The notes: generated from the letters alone by a model not told the origin. A stretch of DNA of 64,000 nt from Haliotis rubra (GCF_003918875.1 NW_025767265.1:124001-188000); one strand, 5' to 3'. Counted from the stretch's first letter, positions 2,990 to 34,176 are shown. Numbers and translations are program-made.

Positions 2990-3460
2990 ACCTAGATTTC
3001 ATAGTGAATGAGGCTACAGACTATCTACCCTTTAAACTAAACCTATTTGCTGTGTCCAAGGCTACCTATGGGATTTGTGGGGAAGTGAGAAATGCCACCC
3101 GTCTCCGTAGTGGGTCACATTTGGTGGAGTGCGCACGGAGACAGCAGTCTCTAAATCTTATGCCAAAACATTTGCCAATATAGAGGTTGCTGTGTCCATG
3201 CATGGAATTCTCAATTCTTGTCGTGTTATCATACGTGACAGGGCACGCTGTCTGTATGATATGAGCGGAGAGGAAATTGCTAGAGCGCTTGAAGATCAGG
3301 CTGTTACAGAGGTGAAACGTTTCACTATTACAAAGGATTGGATCATACCTAAAACCAATACTTATCTCCTAACATTTGCTAGATCATCTTTACAACAGCC
3401 AATAAAAGCAGATTATGTATGTCTCAGTTCCACCCGGGTGTTACAAATGTCAACAGTTTG
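2990..3460 (+). mobile_element. Nimb/I-clade LINE ORF1 (gag-like), N-terminal half, frameshifted
   Basis: LNLFAVSKATYGICGEVRNATRLRSGSHLVEC and LNSCRVII...VTEVKRFTI...TNTYLLTF motifs. Ends in the start of a zinc knuckle, CYKCQQF, at ~3439-3459. Confidence 0.75.
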
Positions 3461-4090
3461 TCTGGGCTGTGTTCTGAGTCCAGTATTATTCATTTTCTTC
3501 ACTAATGAACTTGTCACGGAAATGTACGCAAATTGTGAAAGTGGTATTGTTGTTTCTCATCACATGGAAGACATTCTCTTATTAGTGTTCGCTGATGATC
3601 ATGTTTCAACGTTTGCCTACATTGTGGTTGGTTTGCCAAAAAACAGCTTGATGTGGTCTATGCATTCTGTCAGAAGTGGGGACTTGAAATCAGTATGAAG
3701 AACACGAATGTTATTGTATTCCGAAACGGTGGAAATGTGAGCGGAAAGGAGAAGTGGTACACTGGGAGCTCACATGTTAAATGGTAAAACTGTAACCTAT
3801 TATAGCTACCTTGGTGTTCTGTTTCCATCATCATTGAAGTGGTCAAAAGCATGTCAAACTATCTCCCTCAAAGCTAGTAAAGTCATTTTCTCCCAGTATG
3901 GATTATTTTGAAACAATAAGCATATTTCTTTTACAGTTGCTTGTAACAATTTGTATAGTAGAATCTTGCCTGTATTATTAAATGGTTTAGATATCTGGGG
4001 GGCTAGGTATTATGAATACATAGAAAAGGTACAAACTACATACTTCAAAATATTTCCAAATGTTGGCAGGTATGCATCAAATACTGGGTG
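3461..4090 (+). mobile_element. Fragment of a second non-LTR retrotransposon reverse transcriptase (RTE-X/CR1-L2-like)
   Basis: GCVLSPVLFIFFTNEL and LLLVFADD motifs, followed by VIVFRNGG and YLG remnants in shifted frames. Confidence 0.7.
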
Positions 4091-4647: not shown

Positions 4648-6163
4648 TACTGAGTCAAAAAAAGAAACTTCACATTCTTTCTTCAGGGCACTATAAAAGA
4701 ACGAGAGATGGAACGATGGTTAAATTGTTATTATTTCATTGCTGAGATATGTGTGATGTACTCGATACACTGACAGTGCCATAATCAGTTCCATTAGGCT
4801 ACACCGTCGTTCCAAAACATGGGTATACAGAATGTCAAGTCACAAGAATAAAAAATGAGAAATTTCTCAGTTCAATATCGTGTATGGCCGCCCCGCGCAT
4901 TCACCACTGCCAAACACCGTCTCCTCATCGACTGCCTGATGCTTCTGAACACGTGGTTGGGGATTCTGCGCCATTGCTCTTGCAAGGCAGCGCCAAGTTC
5001 CTGCAAAAATTCTGAGGTTGGTTCCTAAGACCACGAAGCCTTCTCCCAAGTGCACCCCAAACGTGCTCCATTGGATTAAGGTCCATGACGTTGATTCCAG
5101 CGTTTTGAAGGAAATTTCGTGTCAACATCGCGGTATGCGGCCGAGCATTTTCATGCTGGAACTGTAGACCTGGGCCATCAGCCGCCATGAAAGGAACGAG
5201 TTCAGGGGGTGAGCACCTGGTCGTGGTAAGCAGCAGCTGTGAGGTTTCCACGGATGACCAGAAGTCGGGAACGGTTGTTCCCACAGAAAGCACCCCACAC
5301 CATGCAACTTCCGCCCCCGAATATGTCGACTTCCTGTACACAACATTTGGCATACCGTTCACGGCGGCGTCTCCAGACTCTATGCCTGCCGTCCGTGAAT
5401 CTGAGGGTAAACCTGGATTCATCGCTAAAGACGACTCGATTCCAGTCTCTTTGTGTCCATCGGAGGTGACGTTGGGCCCACAGCAGACGTTGACGTTGAT
5501 GAAACGGCGTCAATATTGGTCCACGATATGGACGTCGAGAACGGAGATTGGCAGCCCGCAACCGATTTCGAATGGTCGGTGAGGATAGTCGACCTTTAAA
5601 CATCTCAGCCCTGGTTCGTGTAGCCGGCAGAAATCTGTCACGTAGGTGACGTAGGATGATTTGACGGTCTTCTGCTCGTGACGTCACACGTGGACGACCC
5701 GACCTTGGGCGATCAGAAGTGGTGCCAGTTTGTTGTAGACGACCTAACAAGTCATACACAGTACGACGGCTGCATCCCATTGCTCTTGCGACGTCACTAA
5801 CTGATCTTCCCGCTTGCAACATGCCAACGGCACGTTCACGTTGCACATTTGACAATCGTGACATTTCAAGTACCGTTAGAACTGTGCTTTAAAAGTGTTT
5901 TTTTATTTCTTGAGGCCAATGCAAACACGTGCATATGAAGAAAACTTCGATGCGAAGATCACGTGATCGACTGCACGTGCAAAACCTGATTTGGCACTAA
6001 CGTCATTTGCACGACGAATGTATGGGTTTGAGTGGGTTTTGCTAACGCTTTTCTAGAGTCGAAAGATAGGGATCCCATTTCGGATACATAGATGTATCAT
6101 CAGAGAAAAAATATTCATTATTTTTCAAATTACATTTTGTGAAGTTTCTTTTTTGACTCAGTA
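4648..6163 (-). mobile_element. Tc1/mariner DNA transposon, both ends present, transposase disrupted
   Basis: TIRs TACTGAGTCAAAAAA(A)GAAACTTCACA at both ends with TA TSDs. Transposase 5864-4872: MSRLSNVQRERAVGML, RSGRPR, FSDESRF, LNPMEH, GGHTRY. Frameshifted; QHDN reads QHEN and the WPxxSP segment is deleted. Confidence 0.95.
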
Positions 6164-7760
6164 TATATTAATGGACTCTTCCAAAAGTTAGTCAAATTCG
6201 GAAACTATCGTCAAAACTCAAAATTTTGTGTACAAAGTAATTATTTAAAGAACCGTGAATAAACTTGTAAAGTATTAAACAGACCTTTCCATTACAAACA
6301 CGGCCTACATACAGCAAATTGCCAACTGAATATCATCTCCGAAATAAAATGGAATCTTCCAAAGCGTGCATGTGAAGATATTTGAAAAGATAAATACAAT
6401 ACTCCATAAGTTGCTATTATTAGTGAAATAGTAGTCATTAGGAGTATATTGGGAACATTCTTTTGCATAATGTATCATTTCCTACCTGAAGAGTGACTTC
6501 TCCGCAAAGAAATGTTGGGCAACATGTACTCGCTCTGACCGTTGCACGTTTCTCTGTGAGCGAATCGCCAGTTGCCTAAAAACGAGTTTATAAGGGGAGA
6601 TAATTTGCAATCAATAATGCCTAATGATGCAAACCACTAAACAAATATAAGAAGTTTCTACGGTTCTAGAAAATACATGGCATATTTTGTTACTAGTTTC
6701 AAATGAAAGTGCCACCAAGCAAATCTGCACTAGTTCACACATCTGGCATACATTTATAACACTATAAAACCCATGATACACAAACAGTGTATACAACTTA
6801 AAGCTCAGTAATCATAATAATATTCAGATTTTTTTATGTTTCAGAACAACTGTTTAAACAGTATCTACAAAATAATATATGTTCCATGAAGTCATCTCTC
6901 TGGGAAATAGAAAGATACATATCTCAGCTACAAATTACTGATTTCATAACATATCACCATACTCACTCAGTGATTTTCCTAATAATAATAAACGTAAATT
7001 ATGGGTGAATGCATTTCAAACATACAGCTCAACATGATTGTCAATAATTCTTTGGTACACAGATTCCATAACGTTTCAGAACAGAGTTTTTTATACAATA
7101 GAAGAGGTTGATAACACAGGATTAAGTGGGTTGATAGGAAGCCAGTAAAGAACATGTACATGGTTGTATGTGTCCTCTCACTTAGCCAGATTCTGTCAAA
7201 ACAGGTCTCTCACATAGCCAGAGTGGGATTTGGCTGACTAGGGTTAGTGTTGTGATAACGCATGTCCACATGAGCCATAGTTTGTTTCAACAAGTGCTCA
7301 ATAAGCAAGATTAGTGAAATTTGTATTAAAGTGAGATATATGTACAAAAGTCATTAATATGGTATTATTTGAATTTTTTGGAGGATTTAAGGAAATGCTC
7401 CATTGATGACATTAGTGACAGTTGTTTTTACGTGAGATACATTTATATCGTATTATTTGAATTCTCTACGGGGATTTCAGGAAATGCTCAATGAGTGATA
7501 TTAGTGAAATGATTTTAACTAGTCCAAGATTATTAATGCAAAAATAATTATTATTCCGAACACAAACAATTAGGCCTCTGGTTTCAAAAAGACACAAATT
7601 GGACTGCACATATAAATTCTGTAGTAGTAGAGGGAAAAGCGAGAAAAAGACGTATGGGTGCACCTTGCTTAGAAGCTTCCATACGGGCTAAAATCCCAAT
7701 CCAGGAAATCCCAATCACAATTCCCTGAGCCGTCGACCCTTTTGGCTGCTAACTCGCTAG

Positions 7761-9962
7761 CAGGCAACGAATACGTTGTCGGCTCGTGTGGAGCAAACCA
7801 CGAATTTGTTGGTCGACATCTTGTCGAGGCTGGACAAGGACGACGACGACAAGGAAGAACTCCTGGTGGAAATATACTGAACCGCAAAAGAAACGCAAGT
7901 CAAAATCAAGATTTTGAAAAACTTTACTTTTGACAGATAATACATGAAAACAGGTACATAATAACAATCAACACTTGTTGCATGATGATTGGGACATGTC
8001 AGTCAATGCATGGAAACATTGTTGGTTTACTTTGCCTTGAAGACAAAATCGAAATTGATCCAACAAATCAGTAACGCGTATGTCCACCTCGTGCATTCAC
8101 TACAGCTGTGCACCGCTTGAACATGGAGTGAATCAGACGGTTGACAAAGGCCCTAGGGATTGCCGCACATGTCCGGATGATGGCTGCCTGGAGTTCTGCT
8201 GCAGTTGTCGGACGTGGTCGGACTTCATTCAGTCGTCTCTGCAGCTCGTCCCAAAAATGTTCGATCGGGTTTAAATCGGGACTGACAGCAGGCCATGGCA
8301 GTAGTCGGATGTTATGCTGCTGGAAAAATGCCTGAGTGCCTCTAGCAGTGTGGGGCCTGGCATTATCTTGCTGGAAAATGAGTTGCTGGTGTCGGACGAA
8401 AAATGGCACAACCTGGGGTCGGAGGATCTGGTCGATATAATGTTGGGCAGTGACTCCATTTCCCCGACCTGGCCCAATATTCTGGAAGAATACTGGCCCT
8501 AATCTCTGATTCAGGCCAATCGCTGCCCATACCATAACACTCGGACCTCCCCATGCATCATCTTGCATTACACATTCGTCAGCAAAGCGTTCACCTCGTC
8601 TTCGCCATATTCGAACTTGTCCGTCAGCATGAGAAATGCAAAACCGACTTTCATCAGAGAACAATACCAGTCTCCACTGTTGATGACGCCAGTTTCGATG
8701 CAACGTAGCCCACTGCAGACGATTCTGCGAACGTAAGAGGACGGACGTCGAGCTGGACGACGACAACGGAGGTGGACTGCTCTGAGTCTGCGCCAAACTG
8801 TATCTCCGCTTATTGCTCGGTTGTGACGTCCAATAGTCTGTCGGGCAGTCTCGTTGGCAGATAAAAATCGATCCCCGATGTGCGAACGTTGAATGTGTCG
8901 ATCTTACCGTGGTGTTGTGACTCTCGGACGTCCAGGACGTTGGCGGTCAGCAGTGGTCTGTGTAGCAACAAAACGTTCCTGAGGACGGTAGATGGTCGTT
9001 ATGTGCACATGGAATGCATTGGCAACATCTGCAACACTCTGTCCAGCTTCAAGACGGCCGATGGCTTGTTCCCTCTGTTGCGTCGTTAACCTTGGCATTC
9101 TTGGTGGGCGTTTGTCGGGAGTGATTTCAAACTGATTTGAGGGCATTTTTATACCCCTATGTGTCCGTTACATAATGCGCATCATGATTTTCATGAAAAA
9201 CTTCTGCAACCACATCCCACGGGCAATTCAATTGCTGCGTTTTGGCGATGTGCAATATCCAAGAGAAATCACCAAACAGAACCTGAACATTAACAAACTG
9301 TTTTTTCACAACAAAGGTAACCAATGTGTAGTTACACTATAATATTTAACAATGTTCTATCGAATATTTATTCATTTTGAAAAACTTGCGTTTTTTTATG
9401 CGGTTCAGTATAGAAGGGGAACAAGAAGAGACCCATCTGGATATCCAGAAAGTGCGACACTTTCTACAATCGATGCAAAAGTTGATCTATCTTTCGATAG
9501 CGGCTGTGTTTCTCTTGAAGGTCGTCCACAAGACCTTGAAGCACAGCACGCCGTCGACGAGAAGACAGAAACACCCAAAACAGTTTCCACGGCCAAACCC
9601 GGGGATCCCCACTATATGGAGTAGAGAAGTCGATGTGTGGAATGCAGCCTATTTGGAAAAAAGTATTGTAGTAGGGTAAACGAACCATGCGTTTGTTGTT
9701 TTTTTTTGTCCGGGCATGCACCCTACTTTCCGTACCACGAAAAGCAGTTGGAATACGAAAAGTCTACGACTCCATTCGTCTTTTGCAACCCCAAGCACGC
9801 GACTGTGCATCTGCAAAAATACTAGGCGAGCTGCCCAGAAAACTATTCCCGCCCAAGGTCTGGGAGCAGCAACTCGACTTCTCTATCGTCTTTCTTTTTC
9901 GATATGGGCGAGCGGCAGATTTTGCTGAGCCTGCACAGAAACGGTTCCCCCACCAACCGTAG
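7761..9962 (+). pseudogene. Putative second, convergent ORF of the TIR element, interrupted by the Tc1 and decayed
   Basis: Removing the Tc1 joins QATNTLSARVEQTTNLLVDILSRLDKDDDDKEELLVEI to EGEQEETHLDIQKVRHFLQSMQKLIYLSIAAVFLLKVV (126 codons, to 9679). ORF 9687-9962 follows and ends 5 bp from the stop of the opposite ORF. No upstream ATG. Confidence 0.35.
7875..9410 (-). mobile_element. Tc1/mariner transposon nested in the TIR element
   Basis: TIRs TACTGAACCGCA..AAACGCAAGT with TA TSDs (7873-74, 9411-12). Transposase 9098-8068: MPRLTTQQREQAIGRL, FSDESRF, QQDNARPH, WPAVSPDLNPIEH, GGHTRY. Frameshifted near 8800-8900. Confidence 0.95.
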
Positions 9963-9967
9963 GTGTT

Positions 9968-10972
9968 CTATTCTGCCGGCTTCTCGAATCGTTTCTCGTA
10001 TATTGTAGCCGTGGACTGGAAACATTTTGTCTCCAGTTTGCGAATCGAGAAGCAGCAACAGTCGGGCTTCCCTTCGTATTTCGCTATGGCAAACTTTTTG
10101 CATGTGTAGATTCCTTCCGGAATGTCTGCGTCTTTTCGATGTTTTCTGCACGGAGGGGCTGCTACTTCCATATCCTTGGGCCCGCCATAGTTGGGCAAAG
10201 GGGTATGCCAAATATTGCTCCGTCCCTGTGGTACCTCTGCTATCCACGATAGCTGTTGGAAGAGACAAGAATCTTTCTCCTTGCACGGATAATAGTCCAC
10301 CAATTTGTTGAGGAGGAGTGCGTACTGTATGTTCCAGAAAGCGCAGGCGTTGTCGGACAGGTTCTCTATTTTCGAGATACAGACATCGAACCCGATTACT
10401 TCTGGAACCTTGAGTGGGAGTCGCTCCTGGGGTGTGTAGTCTATTGCTTTCTTTTCCCAGAGAACGCATTTCTTGCTGTCGATGCAGTGGTCGATGGCAC
10501 CACACTTCCATATAGAGTTGTCGGGTCCGAAGAGAGCAGGCAGTTCCGATAGAGCGGCGAGGCAGTCGCAGCATCGGTTGTGCCTGTGCTTGGGTTCCGG
10601 ATAGTATTCGTCAGCAAGAATGATTTGGAGTTTGCCGGCTACGGGTCGAAATTGGTGGGGTGGGTAGATGTAGACGAAATCGATTATTTTCCCGGCTTCT
10701 ACTAGTGGGCGAAAGCACAGCAAATAGAGATCGAGAAACTGGTGAGGGATCTGGGAGCGCTCGTAGAAGGTGTGCCCCGATTGCTCCAGGATTTGTTTCT
10801 CTCGGTTGGAAAGCAACATAGGGCGACACTTCTGCAGCAGGGTCTCGAAGTCTTCTGCTATGTCGGGAGTACTCGGCGTCTGGGGCTTGGGGCCTATACC
10901 ATCTGGGATTCGTGTATATCTGGCTTGCGATATGTGGTACTTCCCCTTCTCTTCCCGGGACAAACGATACAT
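9968..10972 (-). CDS. Uncharacterised Cys-rich protein (334 aa from the first in-frame ATG) carried by the TIR element
   Basis: Stop-free for more than 1 kb with protein-like composition. Cys/His clusters HNRCCDC, DHCIDSKKC, PPCRKH, DCCCF. TATAAAA lies ~75 bp upstream (11046-11052, minus strand). No family recognised. Confidence 0.7.
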   Translation of the reverse strand: MYRLSREEKGKYHISQARYTRIPDGIGPKPQTPSTPDIAEDFETLLQKCRPMLLSNREKQILEQSGHTFYERSQIPHQFLDLYLLCFRPLVEAGKIIDFVYIYPPHQFRPVAGKLQIILADEYYPEPKHRHNRCCDCLAALSELPALFGPDNSIWKCGAIDHCIDSKKCVLWEKKAIDYTPQERLPLKVPEVIGFDVCISKIENLSDNACAFWNIQYALLLNKLVDYYPCKEKDSCLFQQLSWIAEVPQGRSNIWHTPLPNYGGPKDMEVAAPPCRKHRKDADIPEGIYTCKKFAIAKYEGKPDCCCFSIRKLETKCFQSTATIYEKRFEKPAE

Positions 10973-11517
10973 AGCTCTAATTTGGAGTGCTCTTGCATTG
11001 GGAGCCCCCGAAAGTGGTCTTGTCGAAGTTTTGTGCAACCACTCATTTTATACTAGTGCTGGAAGCGTAATTAACCCGTATGGAAGCTTCTAAGCAAGGT
11101 GCACCCATACGTCTTTTTCTCGCTATTCCCTATACTACTTATGTACTTTATAAAGTTTCACCAATGATAAATTGTTTTAGGTGTTACAAATACCGATTAT
11201 CAAGAAAAACACTATTCGTTATGTTTTAATCCTTTATTCTGACATTATTTGATTATTGTAGTTGTATATGGGATAACTGTACAGTTAGTCAGGCATCAAT
11301 GCTCCAAAAATTACATTTTTATGTACTTAGAACAACATGTGGGACTACAAGGGGAACTGATCTCATACCTCTTGTAGAAAGAAGGCGCATTAAGAAAGTA
11401 ACTATTACTATATTGCTATAATCATTATACCCAGTACTATTAAACTTTCGTATGAATATAAACCAAATTTCCTCCGTGGATAATAAGTCTTATCTTACCT
11501 TATCTTAACTAGATATG

Positions 11518-11939
11518 TACTACCCATCAAACGTTTAGACTCACTTAAAGCACTCACTATACGTTATGTATAGTGGTAACATCGAAGATGTATTTATCTA
11601 CTAACTTGGGGGAACCAACTGCAAACCTTATGCAGATGAATTGCACGAGGATCATGCATCAAATTGCTGAAAACCATTGTGCAAATATTGTGCATGTGAA
11701 AAGCTCCGTTTTGGTGTAAATGTTTTTTATGAATTCACCAATTTTCACTGAGTTTCATCATTTATTGAACTCATGACAATAATCTTTTCAACGTTGCAGA
11801 TTTGTTTACAATACATCAGTTCATGTGTAAACAGTACCTTTAAACAGTATGGAATATTTTGCAAATTCTAGTTCAGATCAGTTGACTGAAGTAAGTGGCT
11901 ACATTAACACTAGTGAGTGTAAAGTTTTGATGGGCAGTA
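11518..11939. mobile_element. Tc1-type MITE (~422 bp), copy 1
   Basis: TIR TACTACCCATCAAA.GTTTAGACTCACT. Highly similar to 15985-16408. Confidence 0.85.
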
Positions 11940-13154
11940 TATAAATCATGATATCATCAAATCAGTACATAACGTTATTATCACCGAAGAAGATTTAATC
12001 AATCTTAAGTTTTCATCTGGCCCTTTGCAGAACTAAAAGTATCATTGCTGTATAGATGTTTATATTCATGTATATTGTATGCTTAATGTTATTTATGATA
12101 TCACGTTTGCTTGTTTGCAGATCCAGTTTTTGAACAATATATCAGAAATAAATATGTTAAAACCGAATTTCCATATTACAAACAAACGCACACACACTTG
12201 CTTACTTCTTTAATTGTAGATATTGACTATAGCCTTTGAAGAAAGTCTCATGCTTCAGTGGCTAATGCTAATTACCTGGCTCGCATCTCTCACCTAGCCA
12301 TGACGGCACAGAATAATCTCAAATGTGTAAACTGCAACGGGACACACCCTGCTTCATCTAGGGCATGCCCTGAATATCAAAGGGAATCAAATATAATGTG
12401 AAAAACACATTTCCTATCTTGAACAAAAAAACCTTTACACAAATCAATCTTCAACCCCGTCAAATATCACGTATTCCACTGCAGTCACTTGCTGTGTAGC
12501 AATGTGTTCGGCTGCTTGCCAGACTGACTTGACATGGGTCAAGACAGATAAGCCTGTCTTTTCATCAAAAAAATATACTTCCCAACCCAAAAAAGCTCTG
12601 TCGACGTCTGGGTCTCACACGGAAATCCAGCCTGAGACATCACAATTGACGGTTTTCCAACGAGCCACTTCACAGTCAGCCACTGAGTCATCCAAAACGA
12701 AGGAAGGAAAAAACATAAATAGAAACTTGCCATCTACTTTCATCTAGGTTCTTCTCCAAAATTCATTTGGACCTCTGAATATGGAGGTCACTCTGCCTCC
12801 ACAGGACAGGCGGAGGAAAAGTTCCTCCTCCTATTCACGTGAAAGATCGCCAATTTAGCCCATATAATTCAGCGGAACTGCAGAGTACTTAAAAAAACTT
12901 TAGCTAGATACAGTTTCTAATTCAAGATTTTCAACCGTCAGCATTATGTCTCCAAGAGACATATCTAAAAATACAGATAACTTTCATTTATGACAATACA
13001 GTGTCCATATGAATAATAAAGGTAAAATCCTTGAGGAATTCATTTCCAATAATAATTTATAATGTATTTTCAATGATGATTCAGACACTTATTTACATCT
13101 AGCTACGGGAACATATTCTTCCTTGGATCTGTCACTCGCCGATTCCAACTTATA

Positions 13155-14148: not shown

Positions 14149-15984
14149 TTAACTACAGACGCCAGGACAGAAAGTGTAGGAAGAAAGAAGAAACATATTT
14201 TCGCCGACATCCTACAGTCAATAATTTAGATAAAGTAAACATTTTAAATGCCAAGGCTCGACGCACTTCAAACAGAATAAGTGTCGGTCTTGGAGGAACT
14301 ATGTTTCTAAAATACATTCACGTACACCTATGTCAAAGGTGTAGAACATGGTCCAAAGAATAAAGGGTAAAGGTTACACATCTATTGTACGCCATCTGAA
14401 GGATCTATTAACTAATAAAGCTGAAATAGCAAGTAAAATTGGCGAAACTACCTTCAGTTCTTGCCAAACATTCTTCATCATCCAATTATGTCCCTGGGTT
14501 TCCAGAAACACCAGAAACAACATGAGAGGAAAAGAATCAATTTTAACTCAGACAATGGTGAAGTTTATAATGAATTATTTTCACTATATGGGCTACATAC
14601 CGCCTTTGAGCAAGCTCATGACACAGCAACAGTGGCTGATGGTATCCATTATCAGCTCCTGAAGCATTTGCCTGATTCATGTCTGGAAACACTTCTAGGT
14701 TATAATTGATAAAATATGGACATCAGGGAATTTTCCACCTTCGTGGCGTAATGATACCCAAGCCTGGCCGAGATCATAGCGATCCTACAAATTACAGACC
14801 AATTACTTTAACGAGTTGTTTCTGTTAAACCATGGAACGAATGGTAAACAATAGACTAATTTGGTATTTAGAAACCAATAAACTAATTACAAATATTCAA
14901 TGTGATTTCCGGAAAAATCGCTGTACTATTAATCATTTAGTACGACTGGAATTCTATCTTAAGAATGCGATTGCAACTAAACAACACATAGTATCAATTT
15001 TCTTTGATTTGGAGAAAACATACGATACCACATATGAAAACGGCATCCTCAAGGATTTACATGATTTTGGTTTAAGGAGTCGTTTACCACTTTTTATATC
15101 ACAGTTTTTAACACACAGGCAATTTCAAGTCCGAGTCGGTTCAACGCCTGTCTGATCATTACAATCAGGATCAGGATGTCCCACAAGGAGGTATGTTGTC
15201 TGAAACATTATTTAGTTTTAAAATATACAGTCTTTCTAAGGTTTTAAATGGTTCAGTTGATTGATCACTTTTGTGGATGATTTTAATGTTTCTTGTCGTG
15301 GTAAAGATAAGCATACAATAGAGAGACAGTTACAACTTTATCTCAATAAAATTCATAAATGGTCAATTGAAAACGGTTTTAAATTCCTAAATCAAAACAA
15401 ACTGTATAAATTTTTGCCATAAACCACATAAAGACCCAGAAATAATTTCAAATGGTACACCCATCAAAGTTGTCAAGGAGGCTAATTTCTTAGAGTTATT
15501 TTTTATTCTCATTTGACTTTTTACACACATTAAATACATCAAAATAAATGCTTGAAGGCACTTGGCTTGTTGAAAGTCGTTTCCAACTCTAAGTGGTGGG
15601 GGATCAAGCTCCCCTCCTACACCTAAATCGATCACTGGTCCGCTTGGAACTTCCTAATGGCTCCATCGTATATGGTTGAGCCTGAAAAAGTAACCTAAAA
15701 CTATTAGATTCTGTCCACCACCAAGGCCTTAGACTTTGCCTTGGGTTTTTAGAACTTCTCCTGTTGACAGTCTCTACGTCGATGCCAATGACCCATCTCT
15801 CAACCAACGCTGTATTAAATTATATTTACAGTATATAACAAAACTATATTCTAACGAGTCTAACCCGGCATTTAACTGTGTTTTCAATCCTCTTTATTAG
15901 GATCTGTGCAACCAAACGTCTTCTCTTATTCCGCCCCTTGGACGGAACCTTTCCTTTCTGCTGCTGACATTGAGCTAGGAAATA

Positions 15985-16408
15985 TACTACCCATCAAAAG
16001 TTTAGACTCACTTAAAGCACTCACTATATGTTATGTATATGTATGTGGTTACATCGAAGATGAATTTCTCCACCAACTTGGGGGAACCAACTGAAAACCT
16101 TATGCAGATGAATTGCACAAGGATGATGCTTCAAATTGCGAAAGGCATGAGCAAATGTCGTGCATGTGAACAGATGCGTTTTGGTGTAAAGTTTTGTTAA
16201 GAATTCGCCAATTTTCACAGATTTTAATCATTTACTGAACTCATGACAATAATCTTTTCAATGTTACGAATATGTTTTACAATACACCAGTTCATAACTA
16301 AACAGTACCTTTAAACAGTATGGAATATTTTGCAAAAGCTAGTTTAGAACAGTGGACAAGTAAGTGGCTACATTTACACTAGTGAGTCTAAACTTTTGAT
16401 GGGTAGTA
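15985..16408. mobile_element. Tc1-type MITE, copy 2, inserted in LINE ORF2
   Basis: Perfect 28-bp TIR TACTACCCATCAAAAGTTTAGACTCACT with TA TSDs. Confidence 0.9.
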
Positions 16409-16789
16409 TATATCTCCTCCCCGTCTTCTTTCTTCTCCTCCTTGGCTATTGGTGCTGTCAGAAGTTGACCTAACACTGGCAACATTTAAAAATCAGAAAC
16501 AAAATAATTACAATATAAACAAGAATTTAATCAGTTAAAGAGTAAATATAATACATACAAATCCTTATTTACAGATGGGTCCAAGGATGGTGGCGCGGTG
16601 GCATGTGCCACTGTCATTGAATCCAGAAAAATATCGTCTTTATCAGTTACACCTACTTGGGTTGTCAGTCCAGATTTGAAGTGGTCATCATCGACGATGT
16701 CGTATTGGCCACACTAGATATACTCACGAATACCTGTTAAAATTTGAGGATCCTCCGTTCTGCATCCCTTGTTTTAATGATAATTATCA

Positions 16790-19167: not shown

Positions 19168-20687
19168 TTATTCACGTTTTTCTTTTGGTCCATGGACAAT
19201 AGTTCTGTAACAGAAGCTGCACGACTTCCATAGAAGAAAAACACACACATGGAGGATGAGCAGGACAAGCCCGATGACATCCAGACACAAATACTGATAC
19301 AACGGCATGTCCTGACAATACGACCTCAGATGGGCGCCGCCATATTTGAGCACATGTTCTATCCAGTAAACAGCTTCATCTTTGGGACTTCGTTCCCGGA
19401 GCTTGGTGATTTCGGCAGCTTTCTTGATTTTCCGTGAGTAGGAAGAATTCTGGATCACTTCATTGATGTTGAATACCAAATCGTCAACAGTAAACGTTTT
19501 CAAATCCATCGCCATACCGAATCCAAAATACCCTAACTTCTTGGCATTATAAGGCTGCTCAGCAAACATGGGAAAACCAATCATGGGAACACCATGCAAG
19601 AAAGCCTCGTTCTGACCATAAGCCCCACAATGGGTGATAAACAATTTAGTGTTTGGATGGGCGAGAAGATCAGACTGCGGCATCCAGTCAGTTAACATAA
19701 TATTCGGAGCAGTGTTAATTTTTTTAGATGTTTTGAAAACATAGTTATACTTTGTCCGAGTAAATGCGTCCAACAGGAGTCGAAAGGTTTTATCCGGGAA
19801 AAGTCTAACCTTGCTTCCGAATGATACAATGATCACTGGCTCTTTCTTTCCTTCCACGAACGTCCTATATGGCTCAGGTAAAGGTTTGATATCAGCTGAT
19901 GATGTTGAACCTACGAACTTCACGCTTGGCAGAGTTGCTTTCGGGTATTCGAAGAGGTTCTTGCACAATTAGCCACAGCCAGCCATTAGCGGTGAGTGTT
20001 TCCATGGTGACATAAGGCATCTCGGGTGCGTATATACCCACAGCGTCGGGGTACGAGAAGGGGTCACTGATATAATACATGGAATGCACAATGAAATTAA
20101 ACATACGATGTCCGAAGTCCATGACCGTTGTAGCGGCTATACCACGGCTTGGATCACTGGCTAGCACCAACGGGGTGCGGCTAGCCTGGGCTTCAAAAAA
20201 AGGTACCGTAGAAAATAAATGGTACATCAAGCTTGTAAGCTATAATGGTCAACATTCTTGGTAATGGTGTTGAATCGAATACTATCAAATCCAAATTCAG
20301 TTTCTCAATCGCATGAAACAGATTCGTGTCACGTAATATCATGTCACATATTTTCCTGAATTCATCAAAAAGGGGAGGCGTTTTATCTTGCTCAAAGAAC
20401 CCAGTGATAGTCTTGTCAAATATATCCGCCTCAATGTCATACCCATCCACTGATTTGTATTTCAGTATATTGACTCCCGATACTTGAAGACCTTCCCGAT
20501 TGGCTAGATATGACGGAAGAGCATTCCAGACCACGTGACCTCGTGCAGCCAGCTCTGCTGCCACGGGCAGACAGCCCCGGATGTGACTGTACTCGGGAAA
20601 GAAAAGGAAGAGGATAGAAGCAGCGTCCAGTCTGGCAACGATCACCATCAGCATCAGAGAAGTGACTGTATACGTCTGCCGAGACAT
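19168..20687 (-). pseudogene. UDP-glycosyltransferase copy 2 with two frameshifts (pseudogene or assembly errors)
   Basis: Three consecutive ORFs (20193-20687, 19892-20230, 19168-19968) rebuild a full UGT: signal peptide, YSHIRG, WMPQ...FAEQ signature, TM helix, KEKRE end. Shifts occur at the A7 run 20195-20201 and at ~19952. Confidence 0.88.
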
Positions 20688-21954
20688 ATTGGCAGATCTG
20701 TTTCCTGTTTCAAAAGAAAATTGGATAAGTGAGTGCATTTTACATTGGATATTAGAGTCAATGCATGACTTCTACCACAAACTGAATCTGCCAAGAAAAG
20801 CCAGGGATAATAGCTTGAACTGCGATCCAGAAACAACGGCCATGTACCATACGCTCCCAAATCCCAGGTGTGTCGAATGGGCTTTACGATGCAGTGGATA
20901 AATGCATCCTTCTGTGCCACGTGTGCGTGCAATGGATGATTGTACTAGCCACATGAGATGTCGTATTTCAACATGGATACAGAGATATTCAGACACAGAG
21001 TTTACAGACTTCCAACCAACCAGTCCTCGTCTTACAGCTCCAGGCACACTAACAACAAGCAGTTTTTAAAGTCTTTTGGTCCTTTCCCACTCATCCGGAT
21101 AACGCCCTATCCATTGATTCATAACATCGATCGGAATTGTATCAGCATGTGTTTGACGAGTTAATATTGTCCAAAATCGTACTCCCATCAATACAATATG
21201 TAAAGTTGTTGTTTGAAAAAGTGTCTAACACGATATGTTATCTACACTTGTCCAATTTATGTCAAGCTCGTCAAAATATGACCAGCTAAGCAGGTTTTGT
21301 CCATGAGAATTGTCAACCTAAACACATTGTTATCATTTCATATGCCTTTAAAGAAGGATACGGGAAGCCGGCAGACAGCGGGACGAACACGGACAGAACA
21401 GCAGAAAGGAAAGCCAGCTAGTTGTACTGCGAGCATAAAAACACCAGTTCTTTGTACGCCTCTATGCCTGTTGTTGTTTGAGGAGGTGTTACCTAGTGCC
21501 AGAGGAGTCCGTAAAATGGATGTGCTACAAGAAAATGCAACACTGCTGATACCGCGATAACAAGAATTCAGTCAGTCACTCTAGTCGCATGTACATAATG
21601 AGCAAGCACATTATGAGTTAACTTACTGAACGTAAATAAGTTCATACACTTACTATGGACTTGTTCTTACTGGCTGGGAAAGTTCAGGGCAGCTTGCAAC
21701 ACACGTGATCGGGTTCCCACTGAAATGTGATGGGTACAGAATGAATCGAGCTATAGCGTCTGTCTTGTCGTGTTGTCCACAGACCACACAGACCATATTT
21801 AGATCCCGCCGAAGGTATCATTACACAATGACACTTAGAAAGTGGTCAAATGTATATATTGACACCCGCGGGAGCCGTGCCAGTTTACACTTATCAGAGG
21901 GGTACACAAAGTCTGCAGTCTAGACTACCAGTTGTCCGACTTCCATTTTTGTGG

Positions 21955-25550: not shown

Positions 25551-25694
25551 GGATGTTAGAGTTGGTACAGGTATATGAGGTGAATTTAATACCATAGTTC
25601 TTCCCAAGTTTGTTGAGCCAAGTTGTGAGTAAATTCTCTTTCTGCCCCGGGTGAAAATTAGAACGTATCTGTTTCTTCTTCGAAATCATAGGGT

Positions 25695-28600
25695 GATCTG
25701 ACACCGACATGTGTCTGCAGCATGGAGGTCGGCAACGTGGTCTCTTGTCCAGGTATGTACCAGGATGCAGGATACAGCCTGATCTGACACCGACATGTGT
25801 CTGCAGCATGGAGGTCGGCAACGTGGTCTCTTGTCCAGGTATGTACCAGGATGCAGGATACAGCCTGATCTGACACCGACATGTGTCTGCAGCATGGAGG
25901 TCGGCAACGTGGTCTCTTGTCCAGGTATGTACCAGGATGCAGGATACAGCCTGATCTGACACCGACATGTGTCTCCAGCATGGAGGTCGGCAACGTGGTC
26001 TCTTGTCCAGGTATGTACCAGGATGCAGGATACAGTCTGATCTGACACCGACATGCGTCTGCAGCATGGAGGTCGGCAACGTGGTCTCTTGTCCAGGTAT
26101 GTACCAGGATGCAGGATACAGTCTGACCTGACACCGACATGTGTCTCCAGCATGGAGGTCGGCAACGTGGTCTCTTGTCCAGGTTTGTACCAGGGTGCAG
26201 GATACAGCCTGATCTGACACCGACATGTGTCTGCAGCATGGAGGTCGGCAACTTGGTCTCTTGTCCAGGTATGTGCCAGGATGCAGGATACAGTCTGATC
26301 TGACACCGACATGTGTCTGCAGCATGGAGGTCGGCAACGTGGTCTCTTGTCCAGGTATGTACCAGGATGCAGGATACAGCCTGATTTGACACCGACAAGT
26401 GTCTGCAGCATGGAGGTCGGCAACGTGGTCTCTTGTCCAGGTTTGTACCAGGGTGCAGGATACAGTCTGATCTGACACCGACATGTGTCTGCAGCATGGA
26501 GGTCGGCAACGGGGTCTCTTGTCCAGGTATGTACCAGGATGCAGGATACAGCCTGATCTGACACCGACATGTGTCTGCAGCATGGAGGTCGGCAACGTGG
26601 TGTCTTGTCCAGGTATGTACCAGGATGCAGGATACAGCCTGATTTGACACCGACAAGTGTCTGCAGCATGGAGGTCGGCAACTTGGTCTCTTGTCCAGGT
26701 ATGTACCAGGGTGCAGGATACAGCCTGATCTGACACCGACATGTGTCTGCAGCATGGAGGTCGGCAACGTGGTCTCTTGTCCAGGTATGTACCAGGATGC
26801 AGGATACAGCCTGATCTGACACCGACATGTGTCTGCAGCATGGAGGTCGGCAACGTGGTCTCTTGTCCAGGTATGTACCAGGATGCAGGATACAGCCTCA
26901 TCTGACACCGACATGTGTTTGCAGCATGGAGGTCGGCAACGTGGTCTCTTGTCCAGGTATGTACCAGGACGCAGGATACAGTCGGATCTGACACCGACAT
27001 GTGTCTGCAGCATGGAGGTCGGCAACGTGGTCTCTTGTCCAGGTATGTACCAGGATGCAGGATACAGTCAGATCTGACACCGACATGTGTCTGCAGCATG
27101 GAGGTCGGCAACGTGGTCTCTTGTCCAGGTATGTACCAGGATGCAGGATACAGCCTGATCTGACACCGACATGTGTCTCCAGCATGGAGGTCGGCAACGG
27201 GGTCTCTTGTCCAGGTATGTACCAGGATGCAGGATACAGCCTGATCTGACACCGACATGTGTCTCCAGCATGGAGGTCGGCAACGTGGTCTCTTGTCCAG
27301 GTATGTACAAGGATGCAGGATACAGCCTGATCTGACACCGACATGTGTCTGCAGCATGGAGGTCGGCAACGTGGTCTCTTGTCCAGGTATGTACCAGGAT
27401 GCAGGATACAGCCTCACCTGACACCGACATGTGTCTGCAGCATGGAGGTCGGCAACGTGGTCTCTGGTCCAGGTATGTACCAGGATGCAGGATACAGCCT
27501 GATCTGACACCGACATGTGTCTGCAGCATGGAGGTCGGCAACGTGGTCTCTTGTCCAGGTATGTACAAGGATGCAGGATACAGCCTGATCTGACACCGAC
27601 ATGTGTCTGCAGCATGGAGGTCGGCAACGTGGTCTCTTGTCCAGGTATGTACCAGGATGCAGGATACAGCCTGATCTGACACCGACATGTGTCTGCAGCA
27701 TGGAGGTCGGCAACGGGGTCTCTTGTCCAGGTATGTACCAGGATGCAGGATACAGCCTGATCTGACACCGACAAGTGTCTGCAGCATGGAGGTCGGCAAC
27801 GTGGTCTCTTGTCCAGGTATGTACCAGGATGCAGGATACAGCCTGATTTGACACCGACAAGTGTCTGCAGCATGGAGGTCGGCAACTTGGTCTCTTGTCC
27901 AGGTATGTACCAGGGTGCAGGATACAGCCTGATCTGACACCGACATGTGTCTGCAGCATGGAGGTCGGCAACGTGGTCTCTTGTCCAGGTATGTACCAGG
28001 ATGCAGGATACAGCCTGATCTGACACCGACATGTGTCTGCAGCATGGAGGTCGGCAACGTGGTCTCTTGTCCAGGTATGTACCAGGATGCAGGATACAGC
28101 CTGATCTGACACCGACATGTGTTTGCAGCATGGAGGTCGGCAACGTGGTCTCTTGTCCAGGTATGTACCAGGACGCAGGATACAGTCGGATCTGACACCG
28201 ACATGTGTCTGCAGCATTCACCGACATGTGTCTGCAGCATTGAGGTCGGCAACGTGGTCTCTTGTCCAGGTATGTACCAGGATGCAGGATACAGTCAGAT
28301 CTGACACCGACATGTGTCTGCAGCATGGAGGTCGGCAACGTGGTCTCTTGTCCAGGTATGTACCAGGATGCAGGATACAGCCTGATCTGACACCGACATG
28401 TGTCTCCAGCATGGAGGTCGGCAACGTGGTCTCTTGTCCAGGTATGTACCAGGATGCAGGATACAGCCTGATCTGACACCGACATGTGTCTCCAGCATGG
28501 AGGTCGGCAACGTGGTCTCTTGTCCAGGTATGTACAAGGATGCAGGATACAGCCTGATCTGACACCGACATGTGTCTGCAGCATGGAGGTCGGCAACGTG

Positions 28601-29242
28601 GTCTCTTGTCCAGGTATGTACCAGGATGCAGGATACAGCCTCACCTGACACCGACATGTGTCTGCAGCATGGAGGTCGGCAACGTGGTCTCTGGTCCAGG
28701 TATGTACCAGGATGCAGGATACAGCCTGATCTGACACCGACATGTGTCTGCAGCATGGAGGTCGGCAACGTGGTCTCTTGTCCAGGTATGTACAAGGATG
28801 CAGGATACAGCCTGATCTGACACCGACATGTGTCTGCAGCATGGAGGTCGGCAACGTGGTCTCTTGTCCAGGTATGTACCAGGATGCAGGATACAGCCTG
28901 ATCTGACACCGACATGTGTCTGCAGCATGGAGGTCGGCAACGTGGTCTCTTGTCCAGGTATGTACCAGGATGCAGGATACAGTCTGATCTGACACCGACA
29001 TGTGTCTGCAGCATGGAGGTCGGCAACGTGGTCTCTTGTCCAGGTATGTACCAGGATGTAGGATACAGCCTGACCTGACACCGACATGTGTCTGCAGCAT
29101 GGAGGTCGGCAACGTGGTCTCTTGTCCATGTATGTACCAGGATGCAGGATACAGCCTGATCTGACACCGACATGTGTCTCCAGCATGGAGGTCGGCAACG
29201 TGGTCTCTTGTCCAGGTATGTACCAGGATGTAGGATACAGCC
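25695..29242. repeat. 86-bp tandem satellite, ~41 copies
   Basis: Unit GATCTGACACCGACATGTGTCTGCAGCATGGAGGTCGGCAACGTGGTCTCTTGTCCAGGTATGTACCAGGATGCAGGATACAGCCT, highly homogeneous. Confidence 0.98.
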
Positions 29243-31695: not shown

Positions 31696-33213
31696 TTATT
31701 CACGTTTTTGTTTTCGCTGTTTACTGGCTTTCCTCAAGCAATAGCGCCACGACTTCCATATAAGGAAAACACACACATGGAGGATGAGCAGGACAAGCCC
31801 GATGACGTCCAGACACAAATACTGATACAACGACATGTCCTGACAATACGACCTCAGATGGGCGCCGCCATATTTGAGCACATGTTCTATCCAGTAAACA
31901 GCTTCATCTTTGGGACTTCTTTCTCGGAGCTTGGTGATTTCGGCAGCTTTCTTGATTTTCTGTGAGTAGGAAGAATTCTGAATCACCTCATTGATGTTTG
32001 ACACCAAATCATCAACAGCAAACGTTTTCAAATCCATTTCCAAACCGAATCCAAAGTAACCTAACTTCTTGGCATTATAAGGCTGCTCAGCAAACATGGG
32101 AAAACCAATCATCGGAACACCTTGCAAGAAAGCCTCGTTCTGACCATTAGCCCCACAGTGGGTTATGAAAAGTTTTGTGTTCGGATGGGCGAGAAGATCC
32201 GACTGTGGCATCCAGTCGGTTAACAAAATGTTAGGTCCCAAGTTTACTTTCTTTTCCGTTTTGAAAATATATTTATAGTTGGTTTTAGAAAATGCCGTCA
32301 GTAGCTTCTTGGACATCGTGTCTGGAAGACTTTTCACAATACTTCCGAAAGAAACAATGACCACACCCTCCTTCGCTCCGTCCATGAACTTCTTATATTT
32401 GTCAGGGAGAGGCTTCGGTGTCACTGCGGACAGAGACCCAATCTGCTTCACATTGGGGAGAAAGGCGCTGTTGTAGTTTATTAACGGTTCCTGGTCAATT
32501 AGCCAAAGCCAGGCCTTGGCTGTCAGAGATTCCATAGAGATGTAGGGCCTTTCTGGAGCGTAAGTTGCGACACATCCATAGAGGGAGAAGGGGTCGTATA
32601 CCCACACATGCATGGTAACAAGGATCACATTTGCAACACGTGTCCAAAAATCCATGTTTTCTGTCCATGCGAAAATTGGATACGGAAGAGCAGAGGGGAC
32701 AAAGGGCGTCCGACTAGCATGGGGTTCGAACCCAGCTCCCATGAAGGCAAACGGAACGTCAAGCTTATATGCAATTATGGCCAGCATCCTTCCAGGAGGT
32801 AGGATATCAAATAAAATAAAATCGAAATGTAGCTCTGACAGAGTTTTAAATAGCTTCTCGTCCTTCAGTATGAGATCAGACACGTGGATCACTTCCTCGA
32901 ACGGATCCTGTGCGTTGGTATTGTTTAAGTAATCGTTCACAACACGATCCAGTAGCTTTTCTTCAATGTTGAAGTCATCTACCGACTCATATTTCAGAAT
33001 ATTGACGCCCGGTAACTGCATACCCCTGTGATTGGCCAGTCTAGTTGGAACAGCATTCCATACCACGTGACCACGTGAAGCCAGCTCTATGGCCACGTTC
33101 AGAGAACCCCTCATGTGACTGTATATCGGGAAAAACAGGAACAATATATTGGCGGCTTCCAGGTTCGACACGCAGACCAGAAACAGAAGGAGACTTCCGG
33201 TTCCGGGTCCCAT
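31696..33213 (-). CDS. UDP-glucuronosyl/glycosyltransferase copy 3 (505 aa), single coding exon
   Basis: MGPGTGSLLLFLVCVSNLEA signal peptide, YSHMRG, VSFGS, WMPQSDLLAHP...FAEQ signature, TM helix, KQKRE ER-retrieval end. Splice acceptor at 33231. Confidence 0.96.
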   Translation of the reverse strand: MGPGTGSLLLFLVCVSNLEAANILFLFFPIYSHMRGSLNVAIELASRGHVVWNAVPTRLANHRGMQLPGVNILKYESVDDFNIEEKLLDRVVNDYLNNTNAQDPFEEVIHVSDLILKDEKLFKTLSELHFDFILFDILPPGRMLAIIAYKLDVPFAFMGAGFEPHASRTPFVPSALPYPIFAWTENMDFWTRVANVILVTMHVWVYDPFSLYGCVATYAPERPYISMESLTAKAWLWLIDQEPLINYNSAFLPNVKQIGSLSAVTPKPLPDKYKKFMDGAKEGVVIVSFGSIVKSLPDTMSKKLLTAFSKTNYKYIFKTEKKVNLGPNILLTDWMPQSDLLAHPNTKLFITHCGANGQNEAFLQGVPMIGFPMFAEQPYNAKKLGYFGFGLEMDLKTFAVDDLVSNINEVIQNSSYSQKIKKAAEITKLRERSPKDEAVYWIEHVLKYGGAHLRSYCQDMSLYQYLCLDVIGLVLLILHVCVFLIWKSWRYCLRKASKQRKQKRE

Positions 33214-34176
33214 CACGATGTCGAGGCTATCTGCAAGGAATAAGAAAAGACAATGAGTGAGTAGGTTCTCAGGGGTCACTGCTTCCACTGTCCAGGACAG
33301 TTATATCCGCATTTCTATATCATTTGTCCGGACTTTTCTCTTGTTTGTAAAGGATTAGATTCTTTCTGAAATCAGAACAGACTGGCGTTATGCAAGCCTT
33401 TCGGTGCGTTATATATTAATATATATATTGTTTTTCATAATTAGATAATTATATACTACTAATGGGGTTCAGGACTGTTCCCTTGTATGTCAGTGTAACC
33501 GAATCGCTAGCTCTCCGCAGTGCTTCAATGACTGTGGCTATGTAGCCAATGCAAACACGGGTTTGTTGCAGACAATACAACAGTTAATCGGGGCTAATGT
33601 GAAACCCACGACCACCTTCCTGGCTTAACTAAGGGACACAACTCTGTGCCTTGATGACTGCAGCATCCGTGACCGAACAGGTGAACCTGTACACCTTTGT
33701 ACATGAATATCATGTCACCACACATGGCACTGAAAACATAACTAAATATATCATCCGCCAGGTGTCGCTTCACATCTGTCGAGGGACGAGCGACGCCTGG
33801 TGGCACTGTGGCGGCGCTAATCAGTATACAGTGGGACATGGAAGTTGCAAGGTCAAGGAGAATGTATGTGATAACACGTAAGGGGAATGAATATGATAAC
33901 TCATAACTCATAACTCAGAATGAAGTTCTCCAAACCTGACTTTGACATTCGTCCGTCCAGAGGACCTTTAATCCCCTGACCTCAAATTCCAATGGCATCG
34001 AGATTGATACCAGGCTAGTCAAGCTACTTCGTGCTCTTGCTCTCTGCCCGGTCAATTTTAGCTGATTTCCTTCTGATGGGCAAACGACGATGGGGAAGCC
34101 ACTTTGTTTTTAATACGCCACTTGACATGAACGGATGGTCTTGTGATTCTGAGAAGGGTCATATCCTCCCTGGGAG

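What the first reader, a model, noticed from the sequence alone, without database searches (positions are those of the whole stretch)
9968..10972. Intact orphan 334-aa Cys-rich ORF with its own TATA box next to the right TIR
Seen: the ORF is stop-free although every transposase and RT in this window is broken. TATAAAA (minus, 11046-11052) lies ~20 bp inside the TIR. Cys/His clusters: HRHNRCCDC, WKCGAIDHCIDSKKC, PCKEKDSC, PPCRKH, TCKK, DCCCF. Inference: a metal-binding viral accessory or regulatory protein, recently inserted or under selection. Cys-rich NS3-type proteins of denso/bidnaviruses and Polinton accessory genes are worth comparing, but I recognise no match.
Basis: partly seen in the sequence, partly recalled or inferred. 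Interest (0 to 1): 0.8.

Follow-up and report, generated by a model that had tools for sequence, protein, structure and literature searches.

The report
Decayed gene of unclassified inverted-repeat element
The 334-codon cysteine-rich reading frame in this abalone genome is real but not intact: it is the decayed main gene of a dead copy of a small, previously unannotated mobile element bounded by inverted repeats, and in two other genomes relatives of that gene sit beside a gene typical of asfarvirus-like viruses.

Summary
The ORF (9968-10972, minus strand, 334 aa), the TATAAAA (11046-11052) and the 69-nt inverted repeat (7623-7691 / 11071-11139, 66/69) are all there. The ORF is neither intact nor orphan. 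It has 31 relatives among 1.84 billion representative proteins. Two are full length (P0219, 399 aa; P0001, 511 aa); most of the rest are short fragments, several on megabase eukaryote contigs.

Against those two, the window gene (9843-11020) has one frameshift and no ATG at the family's start. It has also lost 2 of 12 invariant Cys/His.

The gene is one of a convergent pair inside a 3.5-kb element. Its partner, a 198-aa-type gene, is truncated, frameshifted and split by a nested Tc1/mariner.

A 3.2-kb element in another host genome (L014) has the same gene pair, 139-nt inverted repeats (99%) and the same 14-nt termini (AGTAGTAKAGGGAA). No known transposase, fold or Pfam family matches.

In two other contigs the family lies next to a homologue of asfarvirus M448R (RNA-ligase fold). 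The host is a Haliotis.

Verdict: a dead copy of a new kind of inverted-repeat element. A denso/bidnavirus or Polinton origin is unsupported.

The parts
7623..11139 (.). Whole element bounded by inverted repeats. It is 3517 bp, about 1.98 kb without the nested Tc1.
   Evidence: 69-nt inverted repeat, 96% identical. The two-gene layout matches L014 and L001.
7623..7691 (+). Left terminal inverted repeat. It starts with the 14-nt terminal motif AGTAGTAGAGGGAA.
11071..11139 (-). Right terminal inverted repeat. Its outer end is AGTAGTATAGGGAA, identical to both termini of the L014 element.
9843..11020 (-). Broken large gene of the element ('p511 type': HTH-like N-terminus, two Cys/His clusters, C-terminal beta domain). 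Breaks: 1 frameshift and no ATG at the family start position.
   Evidence: tblastn against P0001 and P0219 gave 2 HSPs in 2 frames, outer bounds 9858-11017, query 2-401 and 13-395, no stops inside.
11046..11052 (-). TATAAAA, 19 bp inside the right repeat arm and just upstream of the position that aligns with the family's start codon. A possible promoter element, untested.
   Evidence: 20 occurrences in the window. Not conserved in L014.
7776..9624 (+). Broken small gene of the element ('p198 type': coiled coil plus C-terminal hydrophobic helix), convergent with the large gene. Breaks: N-terminal part missing (1 deletion or truncation), 1 transposon insertion, at least 1 frameshift.
   Evidence: tblastn with the L001 198-aa protein gave 2 HSPs in 2 frames, query 106-197. 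The left piece matches query 86-103. tblastx results are.
7875..9410 (-). Nested Tc1/mariner transposon, with its own 21-nt inverted repeats and TA on each side. Its transposase is split into at least two ORFs (8068-8796 and 8904-9146).
   Evidence: Inverted repeat 7873-7893 / 9392-9412. DDE_3 at 6e-17 plus HTH_38.

Best explanation
The ORF is the largest surviving piece of the main gene of a dead copy of a small mobile element, inserted in an abalone (Haliotis) chromosome.

Shown: intact relatives of the gene are 399-511 aa. They carry an N-terminal three-helix (HTH-like) module, an alpha/beta region, two clusters of invariant Cys/His and a C-terminal beta-rich domain of about 105 aa. The element carries this gene and a convergent small gene between terminal inverted repeats, and the outermost 14 nt of those repeats are conserved between hosts.

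Inferred: in live copies the large protein is a zinc-stabilised, sequence-specific DNA-binding protein. It would recognise the element's ends or control its genes. The small protein has a similar N-terminal HTH and would act as a partner. The enzyme that moves the element is not recognisable in either gene, so it is either supplied in trans or of a kind not yet described.

Shown: the window copy has decayed in both genes and carries a later Tc1 insertion. Inferred from that: it does nothing.
For: - ORF and repeats.
- Family: one word-search hit at 1.5e-61. 31 hits in the exhaustive search, mostly 89-330-aa fragments, several on megabase eukaryote contigs. Full-length forms are P0001 and P0219.
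- Breaks in the window gene. Relaxed constraint. Neutral-decay arithmetic.
- Same convergent gene pair in L001 and in L014, a 2-Mb contig at 38x. The L014 element spans 6273-9465 with 139-nt inverted repeats at 99%.
- Identical 14-nt termini in the window and L014, against 0.01-0.02 expected by chance.
- A third repeat-bounded copy in L016.
- Model of P0001: N-terminal helices 8-39 at pLDDT about 96. The N-terminus resembles that of the 198-aa protein.
- The C-terminal domain is shared with an ~860-aa family: hhalign probability 98.2%, E 4.6e-14.
- The genome's own annotation has the neighbouring genes but not this ORF.
Against: - No transposase, recombinase or replication protein is recognisable in the element, so 'mobile element' rests on anatomy and copy distribution alone.
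- Target-site duplication is weak evidence: TAT/TAT in L014, TGT/TAT in the window.
- Only one copy lies in this window, and the host genome could not be searched.
- The P0001 model is mediocre overall (pLDDT 64) and the Cys-cluster regions are poorly modelled. Zinc binding and DNA binding are both inferences.
- A single-base assembly error could mimic the frameshift. It could not explain the missing start, the lost ligands or the wrecked partner gene.
Confidence: 0.62

Rival explanations
1. The element is a piece of, or a small satellite-like passenger of, an asfarvirus-like large DNA virus that became integrated in mollusc genomes. On this reading the Cys-rich protein is a viral or virus-associated regulatory protein.
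For: - In L001 the full-length relative lies 1 kb from a 524-aa gene. Its high-confidence model (pLDDT 89) best matches the ASFV putative RNA ligase: E 2.3e-34, TM 0.74/0.86. It also matches the 'PM448R homolog' of Abalone asfa-like virus at E 9e-20.
- An independent, divergent copy in L016 again has such a gene within 3.4 kb.
- Relatives of the 524-aa gene sit on virus-like contigs with an RNA polymerase subunit, a poly(A) polymerase and an ERCC4 nuclease.
- The host of the window is an abalone, and an asfarvirus-like virus of abalone has been described (PMC7067878).
Against: - Neither gene of the element has a detectable homologue on the virus-like contigs held.
- The window and L014 copies contain no M448R-like gene.
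- In L016 that gene lies outside the inverted repeats.
- Copies lie on megabase host contigs as discrete units bounded by inverted repeats, with conserved termini.
- M448R-like fragments also occur alone in host genomes.
Confidence: 0.2
2. The large protein is itself a transposase or recombinase of an undescribed type, and the two-gene unit is autonomous.
For: - The terminal 14 nt are conserved between hosts whose proteins are only about 43-62% identical, which points to ends recognised by a cognate protein.
- The repeats in L014 are near-identical (99%), which points to recent movement.
- No other candidate enzyme lies inside the L014 unit.
Against: - No RNase-H-like, HUH, serine- or tyrosine-recombinase signature appears in the sequence or the model.
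- The invariant residues are mostly Cys/His and hydrophobic.
- Both L014 genes also span two frames or are incomplete.
Confidence: 0.1
3. The 334-aa ORF is a functional or domesticated host gene, expressed from its own TATA promoter.
For: The frame is open for 334-359 codons. TATAAAA is suitably placed.
Against: - One frameshift and a missing family start.
- 13 of 69 invariant columns and 2 of 12 invariant Cys/His are lost.
- The C-terminal domain is out of reach of the frame.
- P(no stop) is about 0.33 under neutrality.
- The ORF is not called as a gene, although its neighbours are.
Confidence: 0.04
4. The protein is an NS3-type zinc protein of a densovirus or bidnavirus, or a Polinton accessory protein. 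These are the reader's suggested comparisons.
For: None from tools. The only shared trait is being Cys-rich.
Against: - No named viral protein, Pfam family, PHROG or solved structure matches the ORF, P0001 or the family profile.
- The element has no parvovirus-type NS1 or capsid genes. It also has no protein-primed polymerase, integrase or capsid genes.
Confidence: 0.02

Closest known systems
Class II (cut-and-paste) DNA transposons with terminal inverted repeats, especially unclassified or non-autonomous ones that carry non-transposase ORFs
   Same: Discrete 3-4-kb units bounded by terminal inverted repeats. Termini are conserved within the family. Copies occur in several host genomes, most of them decayed, with other transposons nested inside. 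There may be a short target duplication.
   Different: No DDE/RNase-H-type or other known transposase is present. The two genes are convergent and both unannotated. The terminal motif and the candidate 3-bp duplication match no superfamily that I could test with these tools.
Transpovirons of mimiviruses (small linear DNA elements with terminal inverted repeats that travel with giant viruses). This comparison rests on my own knowledge and was not tested.
   Same: Small size, terminal inverted repeats, a few unannotated genes including zinc-type proteins, and, in two relatives, proximity to a giant-virus-type gene.
   Different: No homology was shown. The copies seen here are integrated in animal chromosomes. 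No helicase or primase gene is present. Association with virus particles is unknown.
Endogenous asfarvirus-like sequences in animal genomes (reported for soft ticks, from my own knowledge), and the ASFV M448R putative RNA ligase
   Same: The 524-aa neighbour gene in L001 and L016 has the M448R fold. Fragments of it are scattered in eukaryote chromosomes.
   Different: The finding's own gene and its partner have no asfarvirus homologue that the tools could detect. The window element contains no M448R-like sequence.
Tc1/mariner
   Same: The nested insertion at 7875-9410 is an ordinary Tc1/mariner, with a DDE_3 domain, an HTH and TA flanks.
   Different: This applies only to the nested insertion, not to the outer element or to the Cys-rich gene.

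Membership tests
Terminal-inverted-repeat DNA transposon (class II) | Terminal inverted repeats at both ends | tested here: met
   69 nt at 96% in the window. 139 nt at 99% in L014. About 720 nt at 91-92% in L016. The 14-nt termini are shared by the window and L014.
Terminal-inverted-repeat DNA transposon (class II) | Target-site duplication of fixed length | tested here: inconclusive
   L014 has TAT on both sides. The window has TGT on one side and TAT on the other. Three bases in two copies are too few to decide.
Terminal-inverted-repeat DNA transposon (class II) | Encodes, or is derived from an element that encodes, a recognisable transposase | tested here: not met
   No Pfam, PHROG or PDB match for either gene. 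The model has no RNase-H-like fold and no significant Foldseek hit.
Terminal-inverted-repeat DNA transposon (class II) | Multiple dispersed copies, or presence/absence differences between genomes | tested here: inconclusive
   Fragments lie on at least six different large (0.36-3.0 Mb) eukaryote contigs from other assemblies. Only one copy lies in this window, and the host genome could not be searched.
Densovirus/bidnavirus NS3-type zinc proteins | Sequence or fold similarity to a named NS3-type protein | tested here: not met
   No named hit came back from any search with the ORF, P0001 or the family profile.
Polinton/Maverick | Protein-primed DNA polymerase, retroviral-type integrase and capsid genes between the inverted repeats | tested here: not met
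   The element holds only the two genes plus a nested Tc1.
Endogenous asfarvirus-like element | The sequence itself is homologous to asfarvirus genes | tested here: not met
   There is no M448R-like sequence in the window. Neither element gene matches the virus-like contigs. The only link is adjacency in L001 and L016.
Zinc-binding protein | Conserved Cys/His ligand clusters; bound metal | tested here: inconclusive
   12-13 Cys/His are invariant among members. Metal binding cannot be tested here, and the window copy has lost 2 of the 12.
Helix-turn-helix DNA-binding protein | Three-helix DNA-binding module | tested here: inconclusive
   Helices 8-16, 21-28 and 32-39 of P0001 are modelled at pLDDT about 96, but no Pfam HTH family matches. 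The window ORF starts after the first helix.
Tc1/mariner (nested insertion only) | DDE_3 transposase with an N-terminal HTH, short inverted repeats and a TA duplication | tested here: met

The most novel reading that the evidence does not exclude
The two-gene inverted-repeat units are a new class of mobile element of marine invertebrates. Either they move by an enzyme of an undescribed type, or they live as passengers of asfarvirus-like viruses (transpoviron-like) and integrate into the animal host genome. On the second reading, the repeated neighbourhood with M448R-like genes is a trace of that shared life.
Probability: 0.12. Interest if true: 0.8.

Novelty: new variant of a known kind. Interest (0 to 1): 0.42.

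Why it matters
The copy in this window does nothing, but it points to two things worth knowing.

- A family of small elements bounded by inverted repeats occurs in abalone and in other, unidentified eukaryote genome contigs recovered from metagenome assemblies. Neither of its proteins is in any curated family, and it has no recognisable transposase. Either a mobilising enzyme remains to be found, or the elements depend on something else.
- In two independent contigs the family sits beside a gene typical of asfarvirus-like viruses. The host here is abalone, an animal known to be infected by such a virus. If that link is real, these elements record gene traffic between large DNA viruses, their passengers and mollusc genomes.

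For annotation, the practical result is simpler. This ORF should be labelled a pseudogene remnant of a repeat element, not a host or viral gene.

Tried and rejected
**Searches that found nothing**
- Pfam on the ORF, on P0001 whole and in six pieces, and on eight relatives gave nothing usable.
- PHROGs gave nothing.
- PDB sequence searches with single proteins and with family profiles gave nothing.
- Foldseek of the P0001 model against PDB gave a best E of 0.68. The weak OB-fold/HIN hits are not credible at pLDDT 64.
- The JGI metagenome scan failed once on a gappy alignment. With a tighter alignment it found no relative.
- An exact look-up of the ORF in public gene calls found nothing.

**Ideas tested and dropped**
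- Hairpin potential of the repeat arms is not significant: z from -1.2 to -1.6.
- A shared homologue of the 198-aa or 511-aa proteins on the virus-like contigs: none.
- The 382-aa ORF opposite the gene in L016 as a 198-type gene: no similarity.
- A partner for the third terminal-motif site at 55055: none found.

**Not run**
- dN/dS among copies. All available copies are 28-65% identical in protein, so synonymous sites are saturated, and no second copy from the same genome was available.
- Identifying the hosts of L008, L014 and L015 through neighbouring proteins returned no names.

**Slips and disclosures**
- In my working I also noted which codon sits at the family's start position.
- I have not repeated these here and have deleted nothing.
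- Contigs L003-L005 and L009-L012 were fetched by protein look-up before one search showed them to be asfarvirus-like. No further such contig was fetched afterwards.
- L015 and L016, fetched later, are host-chromosome contigs of 900 kb and 357 kb that carry decayed fragments.

Full report
**1. What is in the sequence**

The minus strand carries an ATG-to-stop ORF of 334 codons at 9968-10972. The stop-free run around it is 359 codons, 9971-11047. TATAAAA lies at 11046-11052 on the same strand.

A 69-nt inverted repeat with 3 mismatches has its arms at 7623-7691 and 11071-11139. Its 39-nt core occurs nowhere else in the window, against 0 expected. The TATAAAA is 19 bp inside the right arm's inner edge.

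Inside the repeat-bounded unit lies a second, unrelated element. It is a Tc1/mariner at 7875-9410, with its own 21-nt inverted repeats and TA on each side. Its transposase is split into at least two ORFs that match DDE_3 (6e-17) and HTH_38.

**2. The host**

Three neighbouring ORFs of the window are in the public protein collection, on a 726,537-bp contig. They are two single-exon UDP-glucuronosyltransferases and a TMEM45B-like protein. Two of the three cluster at 90% identity or more with named Haliotis asinina proteins; the third (the UGT at 40614-42134) stands alone in an unnamed cluster. The window therefore comes from an abalone genome. The 334-aa ORF itself is not in that collection and is not on record as a called gene.

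**3. The ORF is not an orphan**

- Pfam found nothing for it.
- The word-based protein search found one relative, P0001: 511 aa, 42% identity over 89% of the ORF, E 1.5e-61.
- The exhaustive search of 1.84 billion representatives with P0001 found 31 proteins at E up to 1e-3, and 8 at E up to 1e-30.
- Nearly all of these are fragments of 89-330 aa. Those looked up come from ENA metagenome assemblies, several on contigs of 0.5-3 Mb, which are eukaryote chromosomes.
- A second full-length form came to light as a cluster member: P0219, 399 aa.

**4. The ORF is not intact**

tblastn of P0001 and of P0219 against the window each gave two HSPs in two different reading frames with no stop codon inside them. 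Together they cover residues 2-401 of 511 and 13-395 of 399. The outer bounds are 9858-11017. That is one frameshift.

The family's remaining residues are matched in the other frame.

The ATG at 10972 aligns with an internal residue of the family. Homology continues upstream in the same frame, but there is no ATG where the family starts.

The gene also shows relaxed constraint:
- Of 69 columns invariant in at least four other members, the window copy keeps 56. Other members keep 91-96% in a leave-one-out count.
- Of 12 invariant Cys/His columns it keeps 10. Other members keep all, or all but one.

The open frame is not evidence of selection. The repeat arms differ at 3 of 69 positions. About 5.1% of possible substitutions in the ORF would create a stop. 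At the implied divergence of about 2.2%, the chance of seeing no stop is about 0.33.

**5. The element**

P0001 lies on a 5.8-kb contig, L001, which is the same as L002. That contig has three tightly spaced genes:
- the 511-aa gene;
- a convergent 198-aa gene;
- behind the 198-aa gene and in the same direction, a 524-aa gene.

The window holds a remnant of the 198-aa type gene on the plus strand, convergent with the Cys-rich gene. Its N-terminal part is missing, the Tc1 has inserted into it, and its remaining homology spans two frames. The 524-aa type gene is absent from the window.

A second complete unit lies on a 2.0-Mb, 38x eukaryote contig, at L014:6273-9465 (3193 bp). It has 139-nt inverted repeats at 99% and the same convergent pair. 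The large gene covers query 1-504 in two frames. The small gene is 49% identical over query 3-172. There is again no 524-aa type gene.

The outermost 14 nt of the repeats are the same in the two hosts: AGTAGTAKAGGGAA. The expected number of such sites in the window is 0.01-0.02.

The flanks are TAT and TAT in L014, and TGT and TAT in the window. A 3-bp duplication is possible but not established.

L001 has a similar terminus-like sequence about 300 bp upstream of its large gene. AT-rich, non-coding-looking DNA lies beyond it, so L001 too is probably an integrated copy.

A third, more divergent copy is L016, on a 357-kb contig. Its large gene is 28-40% identical, in two frames. It lies between long, repeat-rich inverted repeats of about 720 nt at 91-92%.

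**6. The proteins**

The AlphaFold model of P0001 is mediocre overall: pLDDT 64, pTM 0.48. Three parts are better modelled:
- an N-terminal three-helix module, residues 8-39, at pLDDT about 96;
- an alpha/beta region at residues 60-135, pLDDT in the 80s;
- a beta-rich domain from about residue 300, pLDDT about 80.

The Cys/His-rich stretch between them is poorly modelled. No PDB fold match is significant.

The N-terminus of the 198-aa protein resembles that of P0001.

The C-terminal domain, residues 295-400, is shared with the C-terminus of a large unannotated ~860-aa family (hhalign probability 98.2%, E 4.6e-14). That family has 140 hits, including proteins of the sea slug Elysia crispata.

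I infer a zinc-stabilised DNA-binding protein. This is inference, not a result. Nothing in either gene resembles a known transposase, recombinase or replication protein.

**7. The viral link**

The 524-aa protein of L001 has 63 relatives. Its model is confident: pLDDT 89, pTM 0.88.
- Against PDB it matches RNA ligases (T4 Rnl1, archaeal Rnl3, the Trl1 ligase domain) at probability 1.0 but low TM-score.
- Against predicted viral structures its best matches are the ASFV putative RNA ligase (E 2.3e-34, TM 0.74/0.86, 27% identity) and the 'PM448R homolog' of Abalone asfa-like virus (E 9e-20).

Relatives lie on dense, virus-like contigs next to an RNA polymerase second-largest subunit, a poly(A) polymerase, an ERCC4 nuclease and a protein of about 1500 aa. 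I read these contigs as asfarvirus-like.

Neither gene of the element has a homologue on those contigs. However, in L016 an M448R-like gene (query 10-521, two frames) again lies near the Cys-rich gene, 1.7 kb outside the left repeat. Elsewhere such fragments occur alone.

Two independent neighbourhoods among five loci with enough flank are suggestive, but they are not proof of a common origin.

**8. Verdict**

The best explanation is a dead copy of an unclassified, two-gene mobile element bounded by inverted repeats. The main rival is an origin in, or dependence on, asfarvirus-like viruses.

**Limits**
- The host genome could not be searched.
- dN/dS could not be computed.

- In my working I also noted which codon sits at the family's start position.

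Noticed in passing
window 55055-55068 (+): A third site carries the element's terminal motif (AGTAGTGTAGGGAA, one mismatch), against 0.01-0.02 expected by chance. The similarity fades after about 15 nt, and no inverted partner was found within 9 kb. It may be a solitary or very old terminus of a related element, or chance.
   Followed up: partly
P0090 and relatives (P0095-P0213); not in the window: A large unannotated family of ~860-aa proteins has 140 hits, including Elysia crispata RRG08_032318. Many sit on ~3-kb contigs or on megabase eukaryote contigs. The family shares its C-terminal ~105-aa domain with the finding's family. It has no Pfam or PDB match and looks like the single gene of another unclassified repeat element.
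   Followed up: partly
L001:3497-3519, 5264-5286, and inverted copies at 5400-5418, 5518-5535 and 5676-5698: A motif of about 20 nt (CTCTCTAGATGTGGGAAAG) lies just upstream of both the 198-aa and the 524-aa genes of L001. It recurs inside 21-nt tandem repeats at the contig end, so it may be a shared promoter or binding site. The last 133 nt of L001 are a perfect inverted copy of 5168-5300, probably an assembly artefact.
   Followed up: no
window 11511-11943 and 15979-16415: Two copies (85-93% identical) of a ~435-bp miniature element with 34-35-nt inverted repeats lie 4.5 kb apart, just beyond the right end of the element.
   Followed up: no
window 25694-29242; 34733-36976; 39781-40451; 60366-62995: Four satellite arrays: 86-nt unit x 41 copies, 83-nt unit x 27, 53-nt unit x 12.7, and 30-nt unit x about 67. 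The 86-nt array is open in several minus-strand frames and produces a spurious 1262-aa ORF. The long ORFs at 60-63 kb are also repeat artefacts.
   Followed up: partly
window 19168-20738, 31696-33288, 40611-42206: A cluster of UDP-glucuronosyltransferase genes on the minus strand. Two appear as single uninterrupted ORFs of about 505-507 aa, and one is split into two ORFs. A TMEM45B-like gene lies at 53744-54580 (+).
   Followed up: partly
window 4925-5864 and 44398-45033 (minus strand); 3129-3698 (+): Further Tc1/mariner-type transposase fragments, seen as split or partial ORFs, and a reverse-transcriptase-like fragment.
   Followed up: no
P0021 and P0157 (NCBI records named Candidatus Thiodiazotropha endolucinida): Members of the M448R-like family and of the ~860-aa family are deposited under a bacterial symbiont bin of lucinid clams. 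They are more likely host or virus DNA mis-binned into that genome.
   Followed up: no
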